Part shown: in pieces, positions 4,006 to 54,999 of the stretch | How positions within the stretch are numbered: position 1 is the first letter of the stretch | How the letters are laid out: the number at the start of each line of letters is the position of its first letter | Origin: Hypanus sabinus | Taxonomy: Eukaryota | Reading direction: 5' to 3' | Length of the DNA: 64,000 nucleotides | Assembly (NCBI RefSeq): GCF_030144855.1 | Contig: NC_082725.1 | Location: 46,128,001-46,192,000, forward strand | The notes under the pieces: generated by a model | What the model was told of the DNA's origin: nothing | The model's input: only the letters and a program-made list of their open reading frames with translations | Database searches by the model: none | Translations under genes and position numbers: made by a program

Positions 4006-4203
4006 TGTAGTGGAGTGCTACACGCAGCGCTAAAATTACGACACGGAGTCGGTAACTGCAGTCGAAGGAAAAAAAACTTTATTCGAAATCCTCAGCCTCA
4101 CTTTTAAGCCTCCCTCAAAGGCTCCAAATCTCTGTGCTTGCAAACCCCCGTAGGCTATCTAATTGTGAGCCGGTTCGGATGTGCCAGGAATTGGGTTGCC
4201 ACA
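4006..4203 (-). repeat. 3' LTR of CsRN1-like element (198 bp)
   Basis: Direct repeat with a 20-bp deletion relative to the 5' LTR; preceded on the minus strand by a G-rich PPT. Confidence 0.93.
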
Positions 4204-7200
4204 TAACCGCCCCCCAGAACCGGCGATACACCCCCCAATGTCCACAGTCTGGGCCAGAACCTGCTTGGGAGGTTGGCCTCTGCGCCGAGGTGCCGGAAAC
4301 TCGGCCGGTTGTGCCAGGTCCACATGGGCCGGTTTGAGGCGGTCCACCGTGAAAACCTCCTCTTTCCCCCCAACGTCCAGCACGAACGTGGACCCGTTGT
4401 TCCGGAGCACCATAAATGGCCCCTCGTATGGCCGCTGCAGCGGTGGCCGATGCCCGCCCCTTCGTACAAACACAAACTTACAGCTCTGCAGGTCTTTGGG
4501 TATGCAGGTCGGGTTCCGCCCGTGCTGTGAAGTGGGTATGGGGGCCAGGTTACCGAGCTTCTCGCGTAGTCTGCCCAGGACTGCTGCAGGATCTTCCTCT
4601 TGCCCCTGTGGGGCTGGTAGGAACTCCCCGGGGATGACCAGGGGCGCGCCGTATACCAACTCGGCCGACGAGGCATGCAGGTCGTCCTTGGGCGCTGTGC
4701 GGATGCCGAGTAGGACCCAGGGAAGCTCGTCCGCCCAGTTGGCTCCTCGCAGGCGGGCCATGAGGGCTGACTTCAGGTGACGGTGGAAACACTCCACTAG
4801 CCCGTTCGACTGTGGGTGGTAGGCAGTTGTGTGGTGCAGCTGAGTCCCCAAAAGGCTGGCCATAGCTGACCACAGGCTGGAGGTGAACTGGGCGCCTCTG
4901 TCAGAGGTAATGTGGGCTGGTACACCAAAGCGAGATATCCAGGTGGTGATCAGGGCTCGGGCGCAAGATTTGGAGGTGGTGTCGGTGAACGGGACAGCCT
5001 CTGGCCATCTTGTGAACCAGTCCACGATAGTCAGGAGGTGCCGCGCTCCGCGTGACACTGGCAGGGGGCCCATGATATCCACATGAATGTGGTCGAAACG
5101 CCGGTGGGCGGGATGGAACTGCTGCGGTGGGGCTTTGGTGTGCCGCTGCACCTTGGCCGTCTGGCAGTGCATGCACGTTTTGACCCATTCACTGACCTGT
5201 TTGCGGAGTCCGTGCCAAACGAACCTGCTGGAAACCATCCGGACAGTCGTCCGGATGGAGGGATGCGCCAAGTTATGAATGGAGTCGAAAACACGGCGCC
5301 GCCTGGCTGTCGGGACGACGGGACGGGGCTGGCCGGTGGTGACGTCACAGAGTAGGGTCCTCTCACCCGGGCCTACGGGGAGGTCCTGGAGCTGCAAACC
5401 AGAGACCATGGTTCTGTAACTCGGAATCTCCTCATCCGCCTGCTGCGCCTCTGCCAGTGCCTCAAAGTCTACCCCTTGGGAAAGGGAATGAACGGTAGGG
5501 CAAGAGAGCGCATCCGCCACGACATTGTCCTTACCCGAGACGTGCCGGACATCCGTCGTGTATTCAGAGATGTAGGACAGGTGGCGTTGCTGGCGGGACG
5601 ACCAGGGGTCTGACGCTTTCGTAAACTCAAAGGTAAGCGGTTTTGTGGTCCGTGAAGGCGGTGAAGGGCCGACCTTCTAGGAAGTACCTGAAATGCCGGA
5701 TTGCCAGGTAGAGCGCCAACAGTTCCCGGTCGAAAGCACTGTACTTGAGCTCGGGTGGCCGCAAGTGTTTGCTGAAAAACGCCAGGGGTTGCCAGCGACC
5801 TGCGATGAGTTGCTCCAGCACCCCACCGACTGCCGTGTTTGATGCGTCCACTGTGAGGGCGGTAGGGGTGTCCATTCTGGGATGTACTAGCATTGCGGCA
5901 TTCGCCAAAGCTTCCTTCGTTTGAACGAAAGCGGCCCCAGGTAATGTCCTTGCTCGGACCCGACATCAGGGCGAACAGGGGGCGCATGATCCGGGCAGCT
6001 GAAGGGAGGAAGCGGTGGTAGAAATTGACCATACCTACGAATTCCTGAAGGCCTTTGATCGTGGTGGGTCGGGGGAAGTGGCGGACCGCATCTACCTTAG
6101 CGGGCAGAGGGGTTGCCCCGTCTTTAGTAATCCTGTGGCCCAGGAATTCAATGGTATCGAGTCCAAACTGGCATTTGGCGGGGTTGATTGTAAGACCGTA
6201 CTCACTCAGTCGGGCGCAGAGTTGACGGAGGTGGGACAGATGCTCCTGACGACTGCTGTTGGCTATGAGGATGTCGTCCAAATAGATGAACGCGAAGTCC
6301 AGGTCCCGTCCCACCGTCTGTGCGGCATTCTTCAGGCTGAACGGCATGCGGAGGAACTCGAAAAGGCCAAATGGGGTGATGAGAGCCGTTTTGGGGACGT
6401 CGTCAGGATGCATCGGGATTTGATGGTACCCTCGGACGAGGTCTACCTTGGAGAAGATCTGTGCGCTGTGCAGGTTTGCTGCAAAGTCCTGAATGTGCGG
6501 CACAGGGTAGCGGTCCGGTGTGGTAGCCTCGTTCAGCCTGCGGTAGTCGCCGCATGGTCTCCAGCCTCCCGTCGCTTTGGGCACCATGTACAGGGGAGAG
6601 GCCCATGGGCTGTCGGACCGCCGGATGATCCCCAATTCCTCCATCCTCTGGAACTCCTCCTTCGCCTGTCGGAGCTTGTCTGGGGGAAGCCGCCGAGCGC
6701 AGGCGTGAAGGGGTGGCACCTGGGTCGGGATGTGGTGCTGTACGCCGTGTCTGGGCATGGCCGCTGTGAACTGCGGTGCCAGACCCGATGGGAAATCCGC
6801 CAGGACCCTGGTGAAGTCGTTGTCAGACAGCGTGATGGAGCCGAGGTGAGGGGCTGGCAACTGGGCTGCACCCAGGGAGAACGTCTGAAAGGTCTCGGCG
6901 TGTACCAGTCTTTCCCTGGGCAGGTCGACCAGTAGGCTGTGAGCCCGCAAAAAATCCGCACCCAGAAGTGGTTGGGCTACGGCGGCCAGTGTAAAGTCCC
7001 ACGTGAACTGGCTGGAGCCGAACTGTAGCTGCACCTGACGGGTGCCATAGGTCCTTACTGTGCTGCCGTTCATGGCCCTCGGGGGGGACCCAGTGCCCTG
7101 CTGCGGGTGTCGTAACTCGTCGGAGGTAAAACGCTGATCTCGGCACCAGTATCGACCAAAAACCGGCGTCCCGACCTTCTGTCCCACACATACAGGAGGC

Positions 7201-7255
7201 TATCCCGATGGCCAGCCGCCATAGCCATCAGCGGCGGCTGGCCCTGGCGTTTCCC
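4159..7255 (-). pseudogene. pol: Disrupted pol (PR DTGAEIS, RT YLDD, RNase H, HHCC/DDE integrase with GPF)
   Basis: Split over ORFs 7070-7438, 5469-7187, 5627-5908 and 4159-5520; frameshifts near 7085, 5935 and 5640; in-frame RT deletion ([10 protein letters not shown]). Confidence 0.9.
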
Positions 7256-7917
7256 GGGAACTTGCAGGGCGGGTGACAACGGCAGGCTTCTGCGCCCCAC
7301 CGCTGGTGGTAGAAGCACCAGTGTTCCTTGGGCTGGGGGTTGGCGGGCTCTGTGGCCGGGCCTGGACTGGTTTGCTGCTGGGAGCGTGGCTGGGAGATCT
7401 GTGCGATGGACGCCCCGCTCACCTTTTTGGCGTTCCACAGCAAGTCCGCCCGGGCTGCCACCTTCCGGGGGTCACTGAAATCCGCGTCGGACAGCAGCAG
7501 GCGTATGTCCTCGGGCAGCTGCTCCAGGAATGCCTGCTCAAACATGAGGCAGGGTGTGTGTCCGTCGGCGAGAGACAACATCTCATTCATTAAAGCCGAT
7601 TGAGGTCTGTCGCCCAAGCCATCCAGGTGCAGTAAACGGGCAGCCCGCTCGCGCCGTGAGAGTCCGAAAGTCCTGAGGAGCAGGGCTTTGAATTCCGTGT
7701 ACTTGCCGTCTGCCGGGGGCGACTGTACGAACTCCGCGACCTGGGCCGCTGTGTCCTGGTCGAGGGAGCTCACCACGTAGTAGTAGCGGGTGTCTTCTGA
7801 GGTGATCTGGCGAACTTGGAATTGGGCTTCGGCTTGCTGGAACCATAGGTCCGGGCGCTGTGTCCAGAAACCTGGCAGTTTCAACGAAACCGCATGAACA
7901 GAGGCGGCGTCGGTCAT
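7228..7917 (-). CDS. gag: Gag of CsRN1-like element
   Basis: MTDAASVHAVSLKLPGFW...CFYHQRWGAEACRCHPPC; open frame, CHCC motif. Confidence 0.85.
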   Translation of the reverse strand: MTDAASVHAVSLKLPGFWTQRPDLWFQQAEAQFQVRQITSEDTRYYYVVSSLDQDTAAQVAEFVQSPPADGKYTEFKALLLRTFGLSRRERAARLLHLDGLGDRPQSALMNEMLSLADGHTPCLMFEQAFLEQLPEDIRLLLSDADFSDPRKVAARADLLWNAKKVSGASIAQISQPRSQQQTSPGPATEPANPQPKEHWCFYHQRWGAEACRCHPPCKFPGNARASRR

Positions 7918-7942
7918 TTCTGGTCCAAAAATCGTTTGGACC

Positions 7943-7955
7943 GTCGGGGTCACCA
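7943..7955 (-). other. Primer-binding site TGGTGACCCCGAC (complementary to tRNA-Trp 3' end)
   Basis: Begins 2 nt after the 5' LTR; sequence typical of CsRN1-clade PBS. Confidence 0.85.
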
Positions 7956-7957
7956 AT

Positions 7958-8177
7958 TGTAGCGGTGTGCTACACGCAGTGCTAAAATTACGACACGGAA
8001 TCGGTAACTGCAGTTGAAGGAAAAAAAAAACTTTATTCGAAATCCTCAGCCTCACTTTTAAGCCTCCCTCAACCTGCCCCCCCGTGGCGCAGAGGCTTCA
8101 AAGCTCAGTGCTCGCAAACCCCCGTAGGCTATCTAATTGTGAGCCGGTTCGGATGTGCCAGGGAATGGGTCGCCACA
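7958..8177 (-). repeat. 5' LTR of CsRN1-like element (220 bp)
   Basis: Direct repeat of 4006-4203; adjacent to the PBS. Confidence 0.93.
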
Positions 8178-13025: not shown

Positions 13026-14760
13026 TTGAATAACTACTTTGGTTCTGTCTTCACTAAGGAGGACATAAATAATCTTCCAGAAATAGTAAGGGACCGAGGG
13101 TCTAGTGAGATGGAGGAACTGAGGGAAATACATGTTAGTAGGGAAGTGGTGTTAGGTAAATTGAAGGGATTAAAGGCAGATAAATCCCCAAGGCCAGATG
13201 GTCTGCATCCCAGAGTGCTTAAGGAAGTAGCCCAAGAAATAGTGGATGCATTAGTGATAATTTTTCAAAACTCCTTCAATTCTGGATTAGTTCCTGAGGA
13301 TTGGAGGGTGGCTAATGTAACCCCACTTTTTAAAAAAAGGGAGAGAGAAACCGGGGAATTATAGACCGGTGAGTCTGACATAGGTGGTGGGGAAAATGCT
13401 AGAGTCGGTTATCAAAGATGTGATAACAGTACGTTCGGAAAGAGGTGAAATCATCGGACAAAGTCAGCATGGATTTGTGAAAGGAAAATCATGTCTGACG
13501 AATCTTATAGAATTTTTTGAAGATGTAACTAGTAGAGTGGATAGGGGAGAGCCAGTGGATGTGGTATAATTTAGATTTTCAAAAGGCTTTTGACGAGGTC
13601 CCACATAGGAGATTAGTGTGCAAACTTAAAGCACTCAGTACTGGGGGTATGGTATTGATGTGGATAGAGAATTGGTTGGCAGTCAGGAAGCAAAGAGTGG
13701 GAGTAAACGGGACCTTTTCAGAATGGCAGGCAGTGACTAATGGGGTACCGCAAGGCTCAGTGCTGGGACCCCAGTTGTTTACAATATATATTAATGATTT
13801 AGACAAGGGAATTAAATGCAGCATCTCCAAGTTTGCGGATGACACGAAGCTGGGCAGTGGTGTTAGCTGTGAGGAAGATACTAAGAGGATGCAGGGTGAC
13901 TTGGATAGGTTAGGTGAGTGGGCAAATTCATGGCAGAGTCAATTTAATGTGGATAAATGTGAGGTTATCCACTTTGGTTGCAAGAAGAGGGAAACAGATT
14001 ATTATCTGAACGGTGGCCGATTAGGAAAAGGGGAGGTGCAACAAGACCTGGGTGTCATTGTACACCAGTCATTGAAGCTGGGCATGCAGGTACAGCAGGC
14101 GGTGAAAAAGGCAAATGGTATGTTGGCATTCATAGGAAAAGGAATTGAGTACCGGAGCAGGGAGGTTCTACTGCAGTTGTACAAGGCCTTGGTGAGACCG
14201 CACCTAGAGTATTGTGTGCAGTTTTGGTCCCCTAATCTGAGGAAAGACATTCTTGCCATAGAGGGAGTACAAAGAAGGTTCACCAGATTGATTCCTGGGA
14301 TGGCAGGACTTTCATATGAAGAAAGACTGGATCGACTAGGCTTATACTCACTGGAATTTAGAAGATTGAGGGGGGATCTTATTGAAACGTATAAAATTCT
14401 AAAGGTATTGGACAGGCTAGATGCAGGAAGATTGTTTCCGATGTTGGGGAAGTCCAGAACGAGGGGTCACAGTTTAGGGATAAAGGGGAAGCTTTTTAGG
14501 ACCGAGATGAGGAAAAACTTCTTCACACAGAGAGTGGTGAATCTGTGGAATTCTCTGCCACAGGAAACAGTTGAGGCAGGTTCATTGGCTATATTTAAGA
14601 GGAAGTTAGATGTGGGCCTTGTGGCTGAAGGGATCAGGGAGTATGGAGAGAAAGCAGGTACAGGGTTCTGAGTTGGAAGATCAGCCATGATCATACTGAA
14701 TGACGGTGCAGGCTCGAAGGGCCAAATGGCCTACTCCTGCACCTATTTTCTATGTTTCTA
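13026..14760 (+). mobile_element. Young 5'-truncated CR1 LINE (RT FADD), nested in an older CR1
   Basis: ORF 13559-14671 with [23 protein letters not shown]; 3' UTR ending in a TTCTATG-like microsatellite; few disruptions. Confidence 0.92.
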
Positions 14761-34089: not shown

Positions 34090-34765
34090 AGGAACACATA
34101 CCAATCCTCAGGGATGAGAAGTGGAGAGTGAGCAGTTTCAAGTTCCTAGGTGTCAAGATCTGAGGACCTAACCTGGTCCCAACATGATGCAGCTATAAAG
34201 GTGGCAAGACAGTGACTGTACTTCATTAGGAGTTTGGAGATATGGTATGTCAACAAAAACATTCAAAAACTTCTATAAATGTACTGTGGGGAGCATTCTG
34301 ACAGGCTGCATCACTGTCTGGTATGGGGCAGGGGGCTACTGCACTGGACTGAAAGAAACTGCAGATGGTCGCAAATTTAGTCTGCTCCATCTTGGGTACT
34401 AGCCTACAAAGTACCCAGGACATCAAGGAGTGTTGTCTCAGAAAGGCAGTACCAACTTTGAAGTTACATACCCAGCACCCAGGGTATGCCTTTTTCTCAC
34501 TGTTACCATCAGGTAGGAGGTACAGAAGCCTGAAGGCACACACTCAGCAATTCAGGAACAGCTTCTTTCCCTCTGCCATCCAATTCCTAAATGGACATTG
34601 AACCCATGAACTCTACATCACTTTTTATATTATTTGTTTTTGCACGATTTTCAATCTATTCAATATACATATGGTAATTTATTTGCATTTATTTATATTG
34701 CATTGAACTGCTGCTAAGTTAACAAATTTCATAACACATACTGGTGATAATAAACCTGATTCTAA
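34090..34765 (+). mobile_element. Rex1/Babar-type LINE 3' fragment in the last GMNN intron
   Basis: HPGYAFFSLLPSGRRYRSL...RNSFFPSAI; paralogous to 48940-49380. Confidence 0.7.
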
Positions 34766-48939: not shown

Positions 48940-49380
48940 TCCAACTGATGTCAATGCAGTTATAAAGAAGGCAAGACAGCAACTATACTTCATTACGATT
49001 CTGAAGGGATTTGGTATGACAACAAATACACTCAAAAACTAGTTGTACCATGGAGAGCATTCTGACAGGCTGCATCACTGTCTGGTATGGGGGAGGGGGG
49101 ACTACTGCACAGAACTGAAAAAATCTGCAGAGGGTTGTAAATCTAGTCAGCTCCATCTTGGGTACTAGCCTACAAAGTACCCAGGACATCTTCAAGGAGC
49201 AGTGTCTCAGAAAGGCAGCATACATTACTAAGGATCTCCAGCACCCAGGACATGCCCTTTTCTCACTGTTAACATCAGGTAGGAGATACAGAAACCTGAA
49301 GGCACATACTCAGTGAGTTAGGAACAGCTACTTTTGCTCCGCCATCCAGTTCCTAGATGGACATTGGACACTACCTCACT
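48940..49380 (+). mobile_element. Rex1/Babar-type LINE 3' fragment
   Basis: High similarity to 34190-34620. Confidence 0.7.
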
Positions 49381-51225: not shown

Positions 51226-51503
51226 CTACTTCTGCCAGCCAGCAGCAGCAAGAGAAACCAGTCAAATGCAGGTAGATGGCATTAAGCTCCCTGTTCATTT
51301 TCGCTTCTTGTCCTCGACAATTTTAATCTTGGTCAACGCTTTACTTGGAGCAGAGCAATGGGTTCGACCACGGGTTCATGTTCCGCCATTAGGAATCGAC
51401 ACAGAATTGCACCCATGTCGAATGCCCCAGGATATCACAGAAGTGCCAGATAGTTCAGTTGGCTCAAAAATTCATTCTTGGAAGCAAAATTACAGGCTGC
51501 AAT

Positions 51504-51715
51504 TGTGGTGAACTATGTGCCTGTCGGGACACGCCCCTGCTGACTGCTCCTGTGGCTCCTCCCACAGGCCCCTGTATAAAGGAGACCTGCGGCCTGAAGA
51601 TCGGCCTCAGTCTCCAGGACCTTGTATGATAGACACTCACTCCTGGTTCCTTCTTCCAGTCAATAAAAGCCGATATCTCGCCTACGTCTCAGTGTGAGTT
51701 ATTGATGGTGCATCA
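51504..51715 (+). repeat. 5' LTR (TATAAA 51575, AATAAA 51662)
   Basis: Base-for-base identical to 54199-54410 on manual comparison. Confidence 0.95.
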
Positions 51716-51744
51716 ATTTTATTGACTGGAAGAACCTTCGCTAC

Positions 51745-54153
51745 ATGAGGAGCAGGAGGTACAGCGCGGGGGACCGGGCCTTCATTCAGTCGGAGGTGCA
51801 GCGGCTGCTCAGGGAGGGGATCATTGAGCCGAGCACAAGCCCTTGGAGGGCCCAGGTGGTTGTTGTTCGGACTGGGCAGAAAAATAGGATGGTGGTGGAC
51901 TATAGTCAAACCATCAATAGGTTTACGCAGCTTGACGCATACCCCCTACCCCGCATCGCGGATATGGTCAACCAGATTGCTCAGTATAAGGTGTACTCGA
52001 CAATAGATCTGAAATCCGCTTATCACCAGCTCCCCATCTGCCCAGAGGACCGCCCCTACACCGCCTTCGAGGCGGGCGGCCGGCTCTATCACTTCCTGCG
52101 CGTCCCTTTCGGTGTCACGAATGGTGTCTCTGTCTTCCAGAGGGAAATGGACCGGATGGTGGACCAGTACCAACTGCAGGCCACATTTCCCTATCTGGAT
52201 AACATCACCATCTGTGGTCATGACAGGCCAGATCACGACGCCAACCTCCAACGGTTTCTCCAAGTGGCCGCAGCTCTGAACCTTACTTATAACAGGGACA
52301 AGTGTGTGTTTGGTACCACCCGTCTTGCTATACTTGGGTATGTCGTGGAAAACGGGGTTATTGGCCCTGATCCCGAACGTATGCGCCCCCTGTTAGAGCT
52401 CCCTCTTCCCACCACTCTCAAGGCCCTCAGACGGTGCCTGGGGTTTTTTTCCTATTACGCCCAATGGGTCCCCCATTACGCAGACAAGGCCTGCCCCCTG
52501 GACAAGTCTACCTCGTTTCCCCTCTCTGCTGAGGCCTGCGCGGCCTTCAACTGCATTAAAGCGGACATTGCCAAAGCTACGATGCATGCAGTGGACGAGA
52601 CCGCTCCCTTCCAAGTGGAGTGTGATGCCTCCGATTTCGCTCTGGCTGCTACCCTTAATCAGGAAGGCAGACCAGTAGCATTCTTTTCTCGCACCCTCCA
52701 AGGCTCTGAAATTCGGCACTCCGCGGTGGAGAAAGAAGCCCAGGCCATAGTGGAGGCTGTTAGGCACTGGAAGCACTATCTTGCTGGCAAAAGATTCACT
52801 GTGCTGACCGACCAGCGCTCGGTTGCGTTCCTGTTCAGCAACCAACAGCGGGGCAAGATCAAAAATGATAAGATTTTGCGGTGGAGGATAGAACTCTCCA
52901 CCTACACCTATGATATCCTGTACCGGCCTGGCAGACTCAATGAGCCCCCTGATGCCCTATCCCGGGGAACATGTGCTAGCACACAGCTCGACCAGCTGTA
53001 CGCCCTTCATGCACAACTTTGCCATCCGGGGGTCACCCGATTTTACCATTTTGTGAAAGCTCGGAACCTGCCGTACTCCCTGGAGGACATCAGGACGATG
53101 ACCAGGGACTGCCAAATTTGTGCCGAGTGCAAACCGCACTTCTACTGTCCTGACACGGCACAACTTGTCAAGGCCACCCGCCCTTTTGAACGCCTGAGTG
53201 TTGACTTTAAGGGCCCCCTTCCCTCCACTGACCGCAATGTCTATTTTCTCAGTGTTATTGACGAGTTCTCACGGTTCCCCTTTGCCATCCCCTGCCCCGA
53301 CACCACTGCCACGTCCGTCATAAAAGCCCTGCGCCAGCTCTTCACTCTGTTCGGGTATCCCTGCTATATCCACAGTGATAGAGGGTCCTCCTTTATGAGT
53401 GAGGAGCTGCGCCAGTACTTGCTAGCTAGGGGCATTGCTACCAGTCGGACCACGAGTTATAATCCCCGGGGTAATGGCCAGGTAGAGCGGGAGAATGCCA
53501 CAGTGTGGAAGGCCACACTTTTAGCCCTCAAGTCCAAAGGGTTGCCGGTCTCTCGATGGCAGGAGGTCCTCCCTGAGGCACTGCACTCTATCCGCTCTCT
53601 GTTATGTACGTCCACCAATGCCACCCCTCACGAACGCCTATTCTCTTTTCCCAGGAAGTCTGTCACTGGGACCACCCTACCAGTTTGGCTGACGTCCCCG
53701 GGGCCAGTGCTGCTCCGGAAACATGTGAGGAGCAATAAATACTCCCCGCTGGTGGAGAGGGTTCACCTTCTCCATGCGAACCCCCAGTATGCTTACGTGG
53801 TCTTACCTGATGGGCGGGAGGACACGGTCTCCATCCGCGACCTGGCACCCGCAGGTGCAGCAGACCACTACCCTGAAGGCTCTCCGGTAACTGTGAACCC
53901 TGCACCAGAGGTGACACCGTACTCACCAGGCCCTACACAGACTCCTCACGACACTTGTATACCGGGCGTTTCGTACGCATTTATACCAGGCGCCTCGCAC
54001 ATGCATGAGGGATCACCGGCGCCTAGTGGGCAAGAACACGCGCAACCCCCGTCCCCTGTGCAATCGCCAATGTTGCCGGCACCTATGCGGTCACAGCCGG
54101 TGCTACGTAGATCGCAGCGACAGATTCGACCGCCTGATCGGCTTGACTTGTAA
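51745..54153 (+). CDS. pol: Uninterrupted RT-RNaseH-integrase ORF (802 aa)
   Basis: RMVVDY, YPLP, DLKSAYHQ, PFGV, YLDN; RNase H CDAS...EKE...TDQ; HHCC; D(FKG)...D(RG)...E(REN). Confidence 0.9.
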   Translation: MRSRRYSAGDRAFIQSEVQRLLREGIIEPSTSPWRAQVVVVRTGQKNRMVVDYSQTINRFTQLDAYPLPRIADMVNQIAQYKVYSTIDLKSAYHQLPICPEDRPYTAFEAGGRLYHFLRVPFGVTNGVSVFQREMDRMVDQYQLQATFPYLDNITICGHDRPDHDANLQRFLQVAAALNLTYNRDKCVFGTTRLAILGYVVENGVIGPDPERMRPLLELPLPTTLKALRRCLGFFSYYAQWVPHYADKACPLDKSTSFPLSAEACAAFNCIKADIAKATMHAVDETAPFQVECDASDFALAATLNQEGRPVAFFSRTLQGSEIRHSAVEKEAQAIVEAVRHWKHYLAGKRFTVLTDQRSVAFLFSNQQRGKIKNDKILRWRIELSTYTYDILYRPGRLNEPPDALSRGTCASTQLDQLYALHAQLCHPGVTRFYHFVKARNLPYSLEDIRTMTRDCQICAECKPHFYCPDTAQLVKATRPFERLSVDFKGPLPSTDRNVYFLSVIDEFSRFPFAIPCPDTTATSVIKALRQLFTLFGYPCYIHSDRGSSFMSEELRQYLLARGIATSRTTSYNPRGNGQVERENATVWKATLLALKSKGLPVSRWQEVLPEALHSIRSLLCTSTNATPHERLFSFPRKSVTGTTLPVWLTSPGPVLLRKHVRSNKYSPLVERVHLLHANPQYAYVVLPDGREDTVSIRDLAPAGAADHYPEGSPVTVNPAPEVTPYSPGPTQTPHDTCIPGVSYAFIPGASHMHEGSPAPSGQEHAQPPSPVQSPMLPAPMRSQPVLRRSQRQIRPPDRLDL

Positions 54154-54198
54154 GAACCTTCGCTACATGAGGACTTTTTCAAACGAAGGGGGGGTGAA

Positions 54199-54410
54199 TG
54201 TGGTGAACTATGTGCCTGTCGGGACACGCCCCTGCTGACTGCTCCTGTGGCTCCTCCCACAGGCCCCTGTATAAAGGAGACCTGCGGCCTGAAGATCGGC
54301 CTCAGTCTCCAGGACCTTGTATGATAGACACTCACTCCTGGTTCCTTCTTCCAGTCAATAAAAGCCGATATCTCGCCTACGTCTCAGTGTGAGTTATTGA
54401 TGGTGCATCA
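54199..54410 (+). repeat. 3' LTR
   Basis: Identical to the 5' LTR; followed by the TSD. Confidence 0.95.
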
Positions 54411-54999
54411 GCAATTAATCGTGGCTCAGAAGAAGTACATTTGGCAGAAGAGTATTCCGTATAATTGCAGGCTGTCTGCAAGATGTTGCATTTGGTCATT
54501 GGTGCCATTTTGTTGAAAGTCTTGCTTGTATTACATTATTTGAATTTAACTGAACGTACCTTCAGCTGAATTCTGCTATAAATATTTTTTAAAGCTGTTA
54601 ACTCGGTCTATTATGAAATTAAAAGGAAAATTTTATATCACACAATTTTAGAAAGAATTTTGTGTTTTTTTTTCAAGTCTAAGGTCCAGTATAATTCATG
54701 TACCTGAAATGAAATTCCCAAGTAATTATATCTATTGATTAACCAGTAAATCTGGGAGGGATTCCTTTTTGTATATTTATTTGAACAGCCAAAACTAAGT
54801 TAAACATCTCTTTACAATTGAATGGGAATAACTATGCTTTACTCTCCTATACACTTCCTTGAACAACTCATAAAATATTTTATTTTAATAATGAGATGTT
54901 TCCAACAAAATATTTTTTAAAAACCTGAACATCTGCAGTAAAACCTGCCTCAGAAAGTTAAAAGGGTATATGTACATGGGGGTGGGGCGTTGGGTCAGA

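What the first reader, a model, noticed from the sequence alone, without database searches (positions are those of the whole stretch)
51504..54410. Freshly inserted pol-only Gypsy element: no gag, no protease, but an intact RT-RH-IN ORF
Seen: identical 212-bp LTRs, a perfect GCAAT TSD, and only 29 nt between the 5' LTR and the ATG of an 802-aa ORF that starts just before RT. Known: Ty3/Gypsy elements need Gag and PR, and non-autonomous derivatives more often lose pol. Inference: either a post-insertion deletion, or a form that moves as such and supplies pre-trimmed RT/IN while borrowing Gag/PR from a partner with the same LTR (a split, two-component element).
Basis: partly seen in the sequence, partly recalled or inferred. 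Interest (0 to 1): 0.8.

Follow-up and report, generated by a model that had tools for sequence, protein, structure and literature searches.

The report
Gag-less deleted stingray Gypsy copy
This is a very young copy of an abundant Atlantic-stingray Gypsy retrotransposon that has lost its gag and protease coding part through one internal deletion; it is an ordinary defective derivative, because complete sister copies exist in the same genome.

Summary
Two identical 212-bp LTRs (TG..CA), a GCAAT target duplication and an intact 802-aa RT-RNaseH-integrase ORF sit at 51499-54415, with no gag or protease. The host is Hypanus sabinus. Its annotated proteins include models running from gag start to pol end (CCHC gag, protease, RT, RH, IN; 1291-1325 aa) that are 99.4% identical to this ORF. 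The window copy therefore lacks about 523 codons (about 1.57 kb), from gag codon 2 to just inside RT. By comparison with two relatives whose DNA I could fetch, the ORF's ATG sits where gag normally starts. The cut falls inside a conserved block, about 65 residues into the mature Ty3 RT, so the product is not a neatly trimmed RT. The junction heptamer ATGAGGA is identical to a leader-like repeat in the element's own 3' UTR. That slightly favours a template switch during reverse transcription over a later genomic deletion. I found no support for a two-component system. Whether the junction recurs elsewhere could not be tested, because the genome's DNA was not retrievable. Side results: the primer-binding site pairs with the element's own LTR, with covariation across three elements (Tf1-like self-priming), and the RT motif reads YLDN across the clade.

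The parts
51499..51503 (.). Target-site duplication, left copy (GCAAT)
51504..51715 (+). 5' LTR, 212 nt, TG..CA. TATA-like box at 51575-51582 and AATAAA at 51662-51667.
51651..51668 (+). LTR segment spanning the poly(A) signal. It is perfectly complementary to the primer-binding site and is the putative self-primer.
   Evidence: 18 nt, 0 of 2000 shuffles reach this length; fold -50.5 kcal/mol, z -3.6. Covariation in L012 and L001.
51717..51734 (+). Primer-binding site, starting 1 nt after the LTR. It is complementary to the element's own LTR, not to a tRNA 3' end.
   Evidence: No tRNA-type PBS is seen.
51722..51751 (+). 5' copy of the 30/31-nt leader-type repeat. Its exact 22-mer core lies at 51730-51751 and includes the ATG and the junction heptamer ATGAGGA.
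   Evidence: (D4)
51745..51756 (+). Deletion junction. The start codon at the native gag position is joined to pol codon S526 of the full-length protein. The 4 nt AGGA after the ATG are of ambiguous origin.
51745..54153 (+). 802-aa ORF: N-terminally truncated RT, then RNase H, then integrase. It is 99.4% identical to residues 525-1325 of full-length P0137.
51880..52344 (+). RT domain (RVT_1). The active-site motif reads YLDN.
52534..52905 (+). RNase H domain (RT_RNaseH / RT_RNaseH_2)
52996..53466 (+). Integrase zinc-binding domain (weak hit) and catalytic core (rve)
54143..54173 (+). 3' copy of the leader-type repeat. It overlaps the pol stop codon (54151-54153) and fills the first part of the 3' UTR.
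   Evidence: Also present in another genomic copy (P0004 tail).
54181..54198 (+). Polypurine tract ending GGGGTGAA directly before the 3' LTR. It is conserved in L012 and L001.
54199..54410 (+). 3' LTR, identical to the 5' LTR
54411..54415 (.). Target-site duplication, right copy (GCAAT)

Best explanation
The element is a non-autonomous, internally deleted copy of a young, high-copy Ty3/Gypsy family of the Atlantic stingray. The complete form of this family encodes one Gag(CCHC)-protease-RT-RNaseH-integrase protein.

About 523 codons (about 1.57 kb) are missing, from gag codon 2 to pol residue 524/525. What remains is both LTRs, the self-complementary primer-binding site, the short leader with the gag start codon, the polypurine tract, and an in-frame RT-RH-IN reading frame truncated at its N-terminus.

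Shown:
- the anatomy of the element;
- the host;
- full-length sister copies in the same genome;
- the position of the breakpoint inside a conserved RT block;
- the youth of the copy.

Inferred:
- The deletion most likely arose by template switching of reverse transcriptase, either in the cycle that produced this insertion or in a recent ancestor copy. The proteins would have come in trans from complete sister elements.
- The frame is open because the copy is young and the junction happens to be in frame, not because its product is used.
For: - **Host and family.** The best hits are H. sabinus proteins at 94-99% identity.
- **Full-length siblings.** P0137 (1325 aa) and P0138 (1291 aa) carry gag, protease, RT, RH and IN. 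The window ORF matches P0137 residues 525-1325 at 99.4%.
- **Complete gene models.** Seven models run from the gag start to the pol end. Three checked loci span 3981, 3981 and 3849 nt.
- **Youth.** Apart from the junction residues, the ORF differs from 16 sister models at only 3 private residues, and the LTRs are identical.
- **Start codon.** The gag ATG lies 20 and 23 nt after the LTR in relatives L001 and L012, against 29 nt here.
- **Breakpoint.** It lies inside a block conserved across the clade and about 65 residues into the mature Ty3 RT.
- **Junction.** The heptamer ATGAGGA is identical to the element's own 3'-UTR repeat. The native gag must read ATG GAG, since all gag models start ME.
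- **3' repeat.** It is a family feature, because the read-through tail of P0004 contains it.
- **Cis signals intact.** The PBS-LTR pairing and the polypurine tract are both present.
Against: - No DNA of any other H. sabinus copy could be fetched. The native leader of the full-length element and the exact breakpoints are therefore inferred from proteins and from relatives at 68-75% identity.
- The junction can also be read as a plain deletion directly after the ATG plus one A-to-G change (K to R). R occurs at that residue in related families. That reading removes the argument for a template switch.
- A single copy cannot show whether the deletion came before or after integration.
Confidence: 0.8

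Rival explanations
1. Post-insertion genomic deletion. A complete element inserted here and the host genome later lost about 1.57 kb between the gag start codon and the start of RT.
For: - A single locus with intact LTRs and target duplication is equally compatible with this reading.
- The junction can be read as ATG followed directly by pol codons with one substitution.
- Three private amino-acid changes show that some time has passed since divergence from the sister copies.
Against: - The 7 nt at the junction match the element's own 3'-UTR repeat exactly. A plain deletion needs an extra point change to produce this.
- There is no useful microhomology between the inferred gag start (ATG GAG) and the pol side. 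The 3'-UTR-type acceptor offers 2-4 nt.
- Zero LTR differences leave little time for a deletion after insertion.
Confidence: 0.25
2. A propagating gag-less subfamily. The pol-only form is itself a source element that has been copied several times, using proteins from complete elements (parasitic). In the stronger version it contributes RT/IN while others contribute Gag/PR (a Cinful/Zeon-like split).
For: - All cis signals are intact.
- Three 754-aa gene models begin at the Met that is residue 49 of the window ORF. The two whose loci were looked up, P0125 and P0127, are single-exon genes in introns of unrelated host genes on different chromosomes, with no gag model within 10 kb upstream. They could be further gag-less copies.
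- Split GAG/POL families are known in maize (PMC8547701).
Against: - None of the 207 retrieved proteins starts with the junction peptide.
- The window locus is not on record as either an 802-aa or a 754-aa product, so annotation cannot be used to count such copies.
- Full-length copies are common, so the split-family criterion fails.
- The ORF lacks a conserved N-terminal RT block.
- A Pol without Gag has no known route into particles in a single-ORF Gag-Pol family (inference).
Confidence: 0.25
3. A retrotransposed spliced subgenomic RNA. The gag-PR region was removed as an intron, and the spliced RNA was reverse transcribed and inserted.
For: - The Gnomon models P0005 and P0006 share one internal splice in two full-length copies. 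Element RNA may therefore be spliced, or the annotation pipeline may skip defects in a repeatable way.
Against: - An intron starting right after the retained sequence would begin GA, not GT. The native gag reads ATG GAG, since its proteins start ME, as in L012 and L001.
- The acceptor side cannot be inspected without the parent DNA.
Confidence: 0.03
4. An assembly artefact, in which a complete element collapsed across an internal repeat.
For: - The element carries a 22-31-nt internal direct repeat. Its family is highly repeated in the genome.
Against: - A collapse across that repeat would remove the whole ORF, not gag-PR only.
- The window has no N and the reading frame is clean.
- The LTRs and target duplication are perfect.
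Confidence: 0.03

Closest known systems
Internally deleted non-autonomous LTR retrotransposons mobilised in trans by complete relatives (general class; for example barley BARE-2 and mouse ETn/MusD, cited from my own knowledge)
   Same: It keeps the LTRs, PBS and PPT but lacks part of the coding capacity. Near-identical complete sister copies in the same genome can supply the missing proteins.
   Different: The part lost here is gag plus protease, and an open RT-RH-IN frame remains. The better-known derivatives lose pol or all coding sequence. Mobilisation of this particular form has not been shown.
Maize Cinful/Zeon and the 25 split GAG/POL LTR families (Sanz-Alferez et al. 2003, as cited in PMC8547701; Stitzer et al. 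2021, PMC8547701)
   Same: A copy that encodes polyprotein domains but no GAG, within a family whose LTRs are shared with GAG-encoding copies.
   Different: In those families fewer than 1% of copies hold both GAG and POL. Here at least seven gene models hold both. This copy also lacks protease and the N-terminal part of RT. No amplified pol-only lineage has been demonstrated.
Tf1/sushi-group self-priming Ty3/Gypsy elements (reviewed in PMC6317226)
   Same: The PBS is complementary to the element's own R/U5 region instead of to a tRNA. It lies next to the LTR and forms a long stem that encloses a U5 hairpin. Gag and Pol are made as a single ORF.
   Different: The complementary segment lies about 70-75 nt downstream of the TATA-like box, so probably not at the very 5' end of the RNA (inference). 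Pfam detects no chromodomain. Clade membership was not tested by phylogeny.
Foamy-virus style Gag-independent Pol expression (from my own knowledge)
   Same: A Pol reading frame with its own start codon and no Gag part.
   Different: Foamy Pol includes protease and is made from a spliced RNA of a complete virus. Here the frame results from a deletion, lacks protease and is N-terminally truncated within RT.

Membership tests
Ty3/Gypsy (Metaviridae) LTR retrotransposon | Direct LTRs ending TG..CA, flanked by a short target-site duplication | tested here: met
   212-nt identical LTRs, TG..CA ends and a 5-bp GCAAT duplication
Ty3/Gypsy (Metaviridae) LTR retrotransposon | Pol domain order RT, RNase H, integrase, with Gypsy-type RT_RNaseH domains | tested here: met
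   Pfam order RVT_1, RT_RNaseH, Integrase_H2C2, rve. The best solved-structure match is Ty3 Gag-Pol/RT.
Ty3/Gypsy (Metaviridae) LTR retrotransposon | Gag and aspartic protease encoded upstream of RT (autonomous element) | tested here: not met
   Absent from this copy. Present in full-length sisters P0138 and P0137 and in relative P0011.
Ty3/Gypsy (Metaviridae) LTR retrotransposon | PBS next to the 5' LTR and polypurine tract next to the 3' LTR | tested here: met
   The PBS at 51717-51734 pairs with the LTR. The PPT lies at 54181-54198 and is conserved in relatives.
Split GAG/POL ('two-component') LTR family, Cinful/Zeon type | Copies that hold both GAG and POL are absent or very rare (under 1%) | tested here: not met
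   Seven gene models run from the gag start to the pol end. Three checked loci span 3981, 3981 and 3849 nt. The criterion comes from PMC8547701.
Split GAG/POL ('two-component') LTR family, Cinful/Zeon type | The POL-only form is present at many independent insertion sites with the same junction | not testable with these tools
   Genome DNA was not retrievable. No retrieved protein starts with the junction peptide.
Split GAG/POL ('two-component') LTR family, Cinful/Zeon type | A complementary GAG(-PR)-only form sharing the same LTR | tested here: inconclusive
   Gag-only and gag-PR gene models exist (P0147, P0150). They may simply be broken full-length copies, and their LTRs could not be read.
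Self-priming (Tf1/sushi-like) reverse-transcription initiation | The PBS is complementary to the element's own 5' transcript region rather than to a tRNA, and the pairing is maintained by covariation | tested here: met
   Perfect complements of 18, 15 and 11 nt in the window, L012 and L001. Each starts 1 nt after the LTR, the sequences differ, and 0 of 2000 shuffles reach each length. The fold has z -3.6.
Self-priming (Tf1/sushi-like) reverse-transcription initiation | The complementary segment is the extreme 5' end of the RNA and is released by RNase H | not testable with these tools
   The transcription start is unknown. The TATA-like box lies about 75 nt upstream of the segment.
Tf1/sushi clade (chromoviruses) | Chromodomain at the integrase C-terminus, and phylogenetic placement in the clade | tested here: not met
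   No chromodomain hit in Pfam for the ORF or for full-length relatives. Phylogeny was not done.
TRIM / LARD non-coding non-autonomous elements | No coding capacity between the LTRs | tested here: not met
   An 802-aa open RT-RH-IN frame is present.

The most novel reading that the evidence does not exclude
The gag-less form is an amplified lineage in the stingray genome. Its Gag-independent RT-RH-IN product, or a shorter product from the well-placed internal Met49, would be used in trans. That would make it a vertebrate counterpart of the maize split GAG/POL families. The three 754-aa single-exon models could be its other members.
Probability: 0.04. Interest if true: 0.7.

Novelty: new member of a known kind. 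Interest (0 to 1): 0.2.

Why it matters
The main value is as a correct annotation. This locus is a defective copy of an active-looking stingray Gypsy family, not a new kind of element. It does show that the family was mobile very recently and that it produces deletion derivatives.

Three features of the family may interest transposon specialists more than the deletion does:
- the primer-binding site pairs with the element's own LTR, and the pairing covaries across species;
- a leader-like repeat sits in the 3' UTR and could promote template switching;
- the RT active-site motif reads YLDN across the clade.

Tried and rejected
- **Other H. sabinus copies.** I tried to fetch their DNA to compare the leader and count junctions. 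Every NCBI locus was returned without DNA because the file is too large. One ENA sample failed in the same way.
- **Exact look-ups.** Neither the 802-aa ORF nor its Met49 version is on record.
- **Metagenome scan.** An 18-mer of the leader repeat gave 10 hits. All were chance matches of 18-24 nt with no retroelement protein.
- **Viral-contig scans.** Neither the DNA scan nor the protein scan found anything.
- **Apparent deletions in gene models.** I first read the internal gaps in Gnomon models (P0001, P0005/P0006, P0132, P0144) as evidence for many deletion derivatives. I dropped this because the gene spans of P0002, P0005 and P0006 equal the full-length ORF span, so their gaps are predicted introns.
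- **3'-UTR copy in relatives.** An eyeballed similarity between the L001 leader and its 3' UTR was not significant. The 3'-UTR leader copy is therefore specific to the H. sabinus lineage.
- **The other LTR element in the window.** The element at 4116-8177 on the minus strand is an unrelated, decayed Gypsy (about 30% identity, DUF7041 gag). It is not a partner.
- **Spliced-RNA origin.** Rejected on the inferred donor dinucleotide.
- **Other ORFs.** Ten other window ORFs gave no Pfam hit. There are no tRNA genes and no tandem repeats.
Full report
**Observation**

- Two 212-nt direct repeats at 51504-51715 and 54199-54410 are 100% identical. They begin TG and end CA.
- They are flanked by GCAAT on both sides, at 51499-51503 and 54411-54415.
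- The LTR sequence occurs nowhere else in the 64-kb window.
- Between the LTRs lies one long ORF, 51745-54153 on the plus strand, of 802 aa. Pfam hits, in order, are RVT_1, RT_RNaseH/RT_RNaseH_2, a weak Integrase_H2C2 and rve. There is no gag or protease hit.
- The window has no N.

**Host and family**

A protein search places the window in the Atlantic stingray, Hypanus sabinus. Dozens of its annotated 'uncharacterized' proteins match at 94-99% identity.

The complete family member is a single reading frame. It holds Gag with two CCHC knuckles, an aspartic protease, RT, RNase H and integrase. Examples are P0137 (1325 aa) and P0138 (1291 aa). The same architecture is seen in relatives at 55-75% identity from other elasmobranchs and from cnidarians.

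The window ORF aligns to P0137 residues 525-1325 at 99.4% identity. No gag or protease of this family lies anywhere else in the window.

Seven gene models start with the gag N-terminus and end with the pol C-terminus. For three loci I could read the gene span:
- 3981 nt for P0002 and P0005, which equals the full-length frame;
- 3849 nt for P0006, which starts at an internal Met.

This also shows that the internal gaps in those three models, and possibly in other such models, are predicted introns rather than real deletions. I therefore do not use them as evidence.

**What is missing and where the cut lies**

Relative to P0137, the window copy lacks residues 2 to 524/525. That is about 523 codons, or about 1.57 kb.

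Two relatives with retrievable DNA show where gag normally starts. They are L001 (Logan run ERR6050755, 68% identity) and L012 (JGI contig Ga0316163_100074, 75% identity).
- The gag ATG follows the 5' LTR after only 20 and 23 nt, just behind the primer-binding site.
- The 29 nt seen in the window are therefore the normal leader.
- The ORF's ATG sits at the native gag start position.

On the other side, the cut falls between K525 and S526. This is in the middle of a block (LF.NLT.DC.PIATK|SRRYS) that is conserved from cnidarian to ray elements. Aligned to the crystallised mature Ty3 RT (4ol8), ORF residue 14 corresponds to RT residue 79. About 65 N-terminal RT residues have no counterpart in the ORF. 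The product is therefore a truncated RT, not a pre-trimmed one.

The start codon has a poor context (T at -3, A at +4). Met49 has a good one (A at -3, G at +4).

**Age**

Compared with 16 sister models, the ORF differs only at the two junction residues and at three private positions: R250C, V253D and R343K. Together with zero LTR differences, this marks a very recent insertion. The open frame needs no selection to explain it.

**How the deletion arose**

A 22-nt string at 51730-51751 includes the ATG and the next four bases. It recurs exactly at 54152-54173, directly after the pol stop codon. With flanks, the similarity is 29 of 31 nt (0 of 500 shuffles reach the score).

The 3' copy is not private to this element. 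The frameshifted read-through tail of P0004, a different genomic copy, spells the same sequence with a one-base deletion. The copy is absent from the 3' UTRs of L012 and L001.

All gag models start Met-Glu, so the native 5' sequence must read ATG GAG. The window reads ATG AGG A at the junction, exactly like its own 3'-UTR copy.

The simplest reading has three steps:
- minus-strand synthesis left the pol template at the start of RT;
- it resumed on a 3'-UTR-type copy, using 2-4 nt of microhomology;
- it reached the primer-binding site through the shared leader homology.

That is a reverse-transcription error, either in the cycle that made this insertion or in a recent ancestor.

The alternative is a plain deletion right after the ATG plus one A-to-G change (Lys to Arg). 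It differs by a single nucleotide, and Arg occurs at that residue in related families. I therefore give the template-switch reading only a moderate edge.

A spliced-RNA origin is unlikely, because the implied intron would begin GA.

**Two-component idea**

Split families are known in maize. Cinful encodes polyprotein domains and Zeon encodes GAG. In 25 further families, fewer than 1% of copies hold both parts (PMC8547701). The stingray family fails that criterion, because complete copies are common.

I could not count junction-sharing insertions.
- DNA of the NCBI assembly was not retrievable.
- The window's product is not on record.
- None of the 207 retrieved proteins starts with the junction peptide.

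Three 754-aa models begin at the Met that corresponds to residue 49 of the window ORF. For two of them, P0125 and P0127, the loci were looked up. They are single-exon genes inside introns of unrelated host genes on different chromosomes, with no gag model within 10 kb upstream. They are the best candidates for further gag-less copies. They may equally be complete copies with a broken 5' half.

I put about 0.25 on the form having been copied more than once. I put a few percent on its product having any role.

**Cis signals**

The primer-binding site starts one base after the 5' LTR. It is perfectly complementary, over 18 nt, to an LTR segment that spans the AATAAA signal.
- L012 and L001 have the same arrangement with different sequences, 15 and 11 nt long.
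- In each of the three elements, 0 of 2000 shuffles reach the observed length.
- The RNA fold pairs the two segments around a U5 hairpin (-50.5 kcal/mol, z -3.6).

This covariation supports self-priming of reverse transcription, as described for the Tf1/sushi group (PMC6317226). Two differences stand out. No chromodomain is detected. The segment lies about 70-75 nt downstream of the TATA-like box in all three elements, so it is probably internal to R.

The polypurine tract ending GGGGTGAA is conserved in the three elements.

**Verdict**

This is an ordinary, very young deletion derivative of a recently active stingray Gypsy family. The deletion alternative is supported and the split-element alternative is not. 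The decisive genome-wide junction count remains to be done.

Noticed in passing
window 51651-51668 and 51717-51734; L012 3878-3892 and 3945-3959; L001 74-84 and 135-145: The primer-binding site is complementary to the element's own LTR around the poly(A) signal. The complements are 18, 15 and 11 nt long and covary across three elements. This suggests Tf1-like self-priming in a Gypsy clade with no detected chromodomain.
   Followed up: partly
window 51722-51751 and 54143-54173: A 30/31-nt leader-type repeat (exact 22-mer core) occurs after the PBS and again at the pol stop and 3' UTR. It is present in another H. sabinus copy (P0004 tail) but not in relatives L012 and L001. Its function is unknown. 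It offers homology for template switches that could also produce ORF-less mini-elements.
   Followed up: partly
window 52189-52200 (ORF residues 149-152): The RT active-site motif reads YLDN instead of the canonical YxDD. The same is seen in most relatives, down to cnidarian elements at 55-60% identity. One relative (P0021) has YLDD.
   Followed up: partly
window 4116-8177, minus strand: An older, unrelated Gypsy element. Its LTR ends are about 91% alike, it has a DUF7041-type gag, and its pol is broken into separate RT and IN ORFs. It is only about 30% identical to the finding's ORF.
   Followed up: partly
window 13559-14671, plus strand: A 370-aa ORF with an RVT_1 hit, probably a LINE-type reverse transcriptase fragment. 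Related repeats lie at 14.3-14.6, 19.4-20.1 and 25.8-26.8 kb.
   Followed up: no
window 34331-34603 and 49097-49369: Two segments of about 270 nt, 86-89% alike and 14.8 kb apart, probably copies of a short interspersed repeat.
   Followed up: no
H. sabinus gene models P0005 and P0006 (no window coordinates): Two full-length copies on different chromosomes are annotated with the same internal splice, which joins the gag zinc knuckle to mid-RT. Their gene spans equal the intact frame. This is either repeatable annotation behaviour or real splicing of element RNA.
   Followed up: partly
ENA sample ERZ26222911, 11,255-nt contig carrying P0009 (no DNA held): Three head-to-tail copies of a 73%-identical relative, spaced about 3.8-4.1 kb apart. 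This suggests tandem arrays that share LTRs.
   Followed up: no
Gag N-terminus and Pol C-terminus of the family (P0137 residues 5-12 and 1318-1325; window 54127-54150): Both ends of the polyprotein carry an RP(P)DRLDL-like motif. Similar motifs (LRPERL.. and RRPPDRL..) occur at both ends across the clade. The reason is unknown.
   Followed up: no
L006 and L009 (JGI metagenome contigs): Two of the ten chance hits to the 18-mer extend to 22 identical bases. No retroelement is encoded there, so these are most likely coincidence in an unrelated gene.
   Followed up: partly
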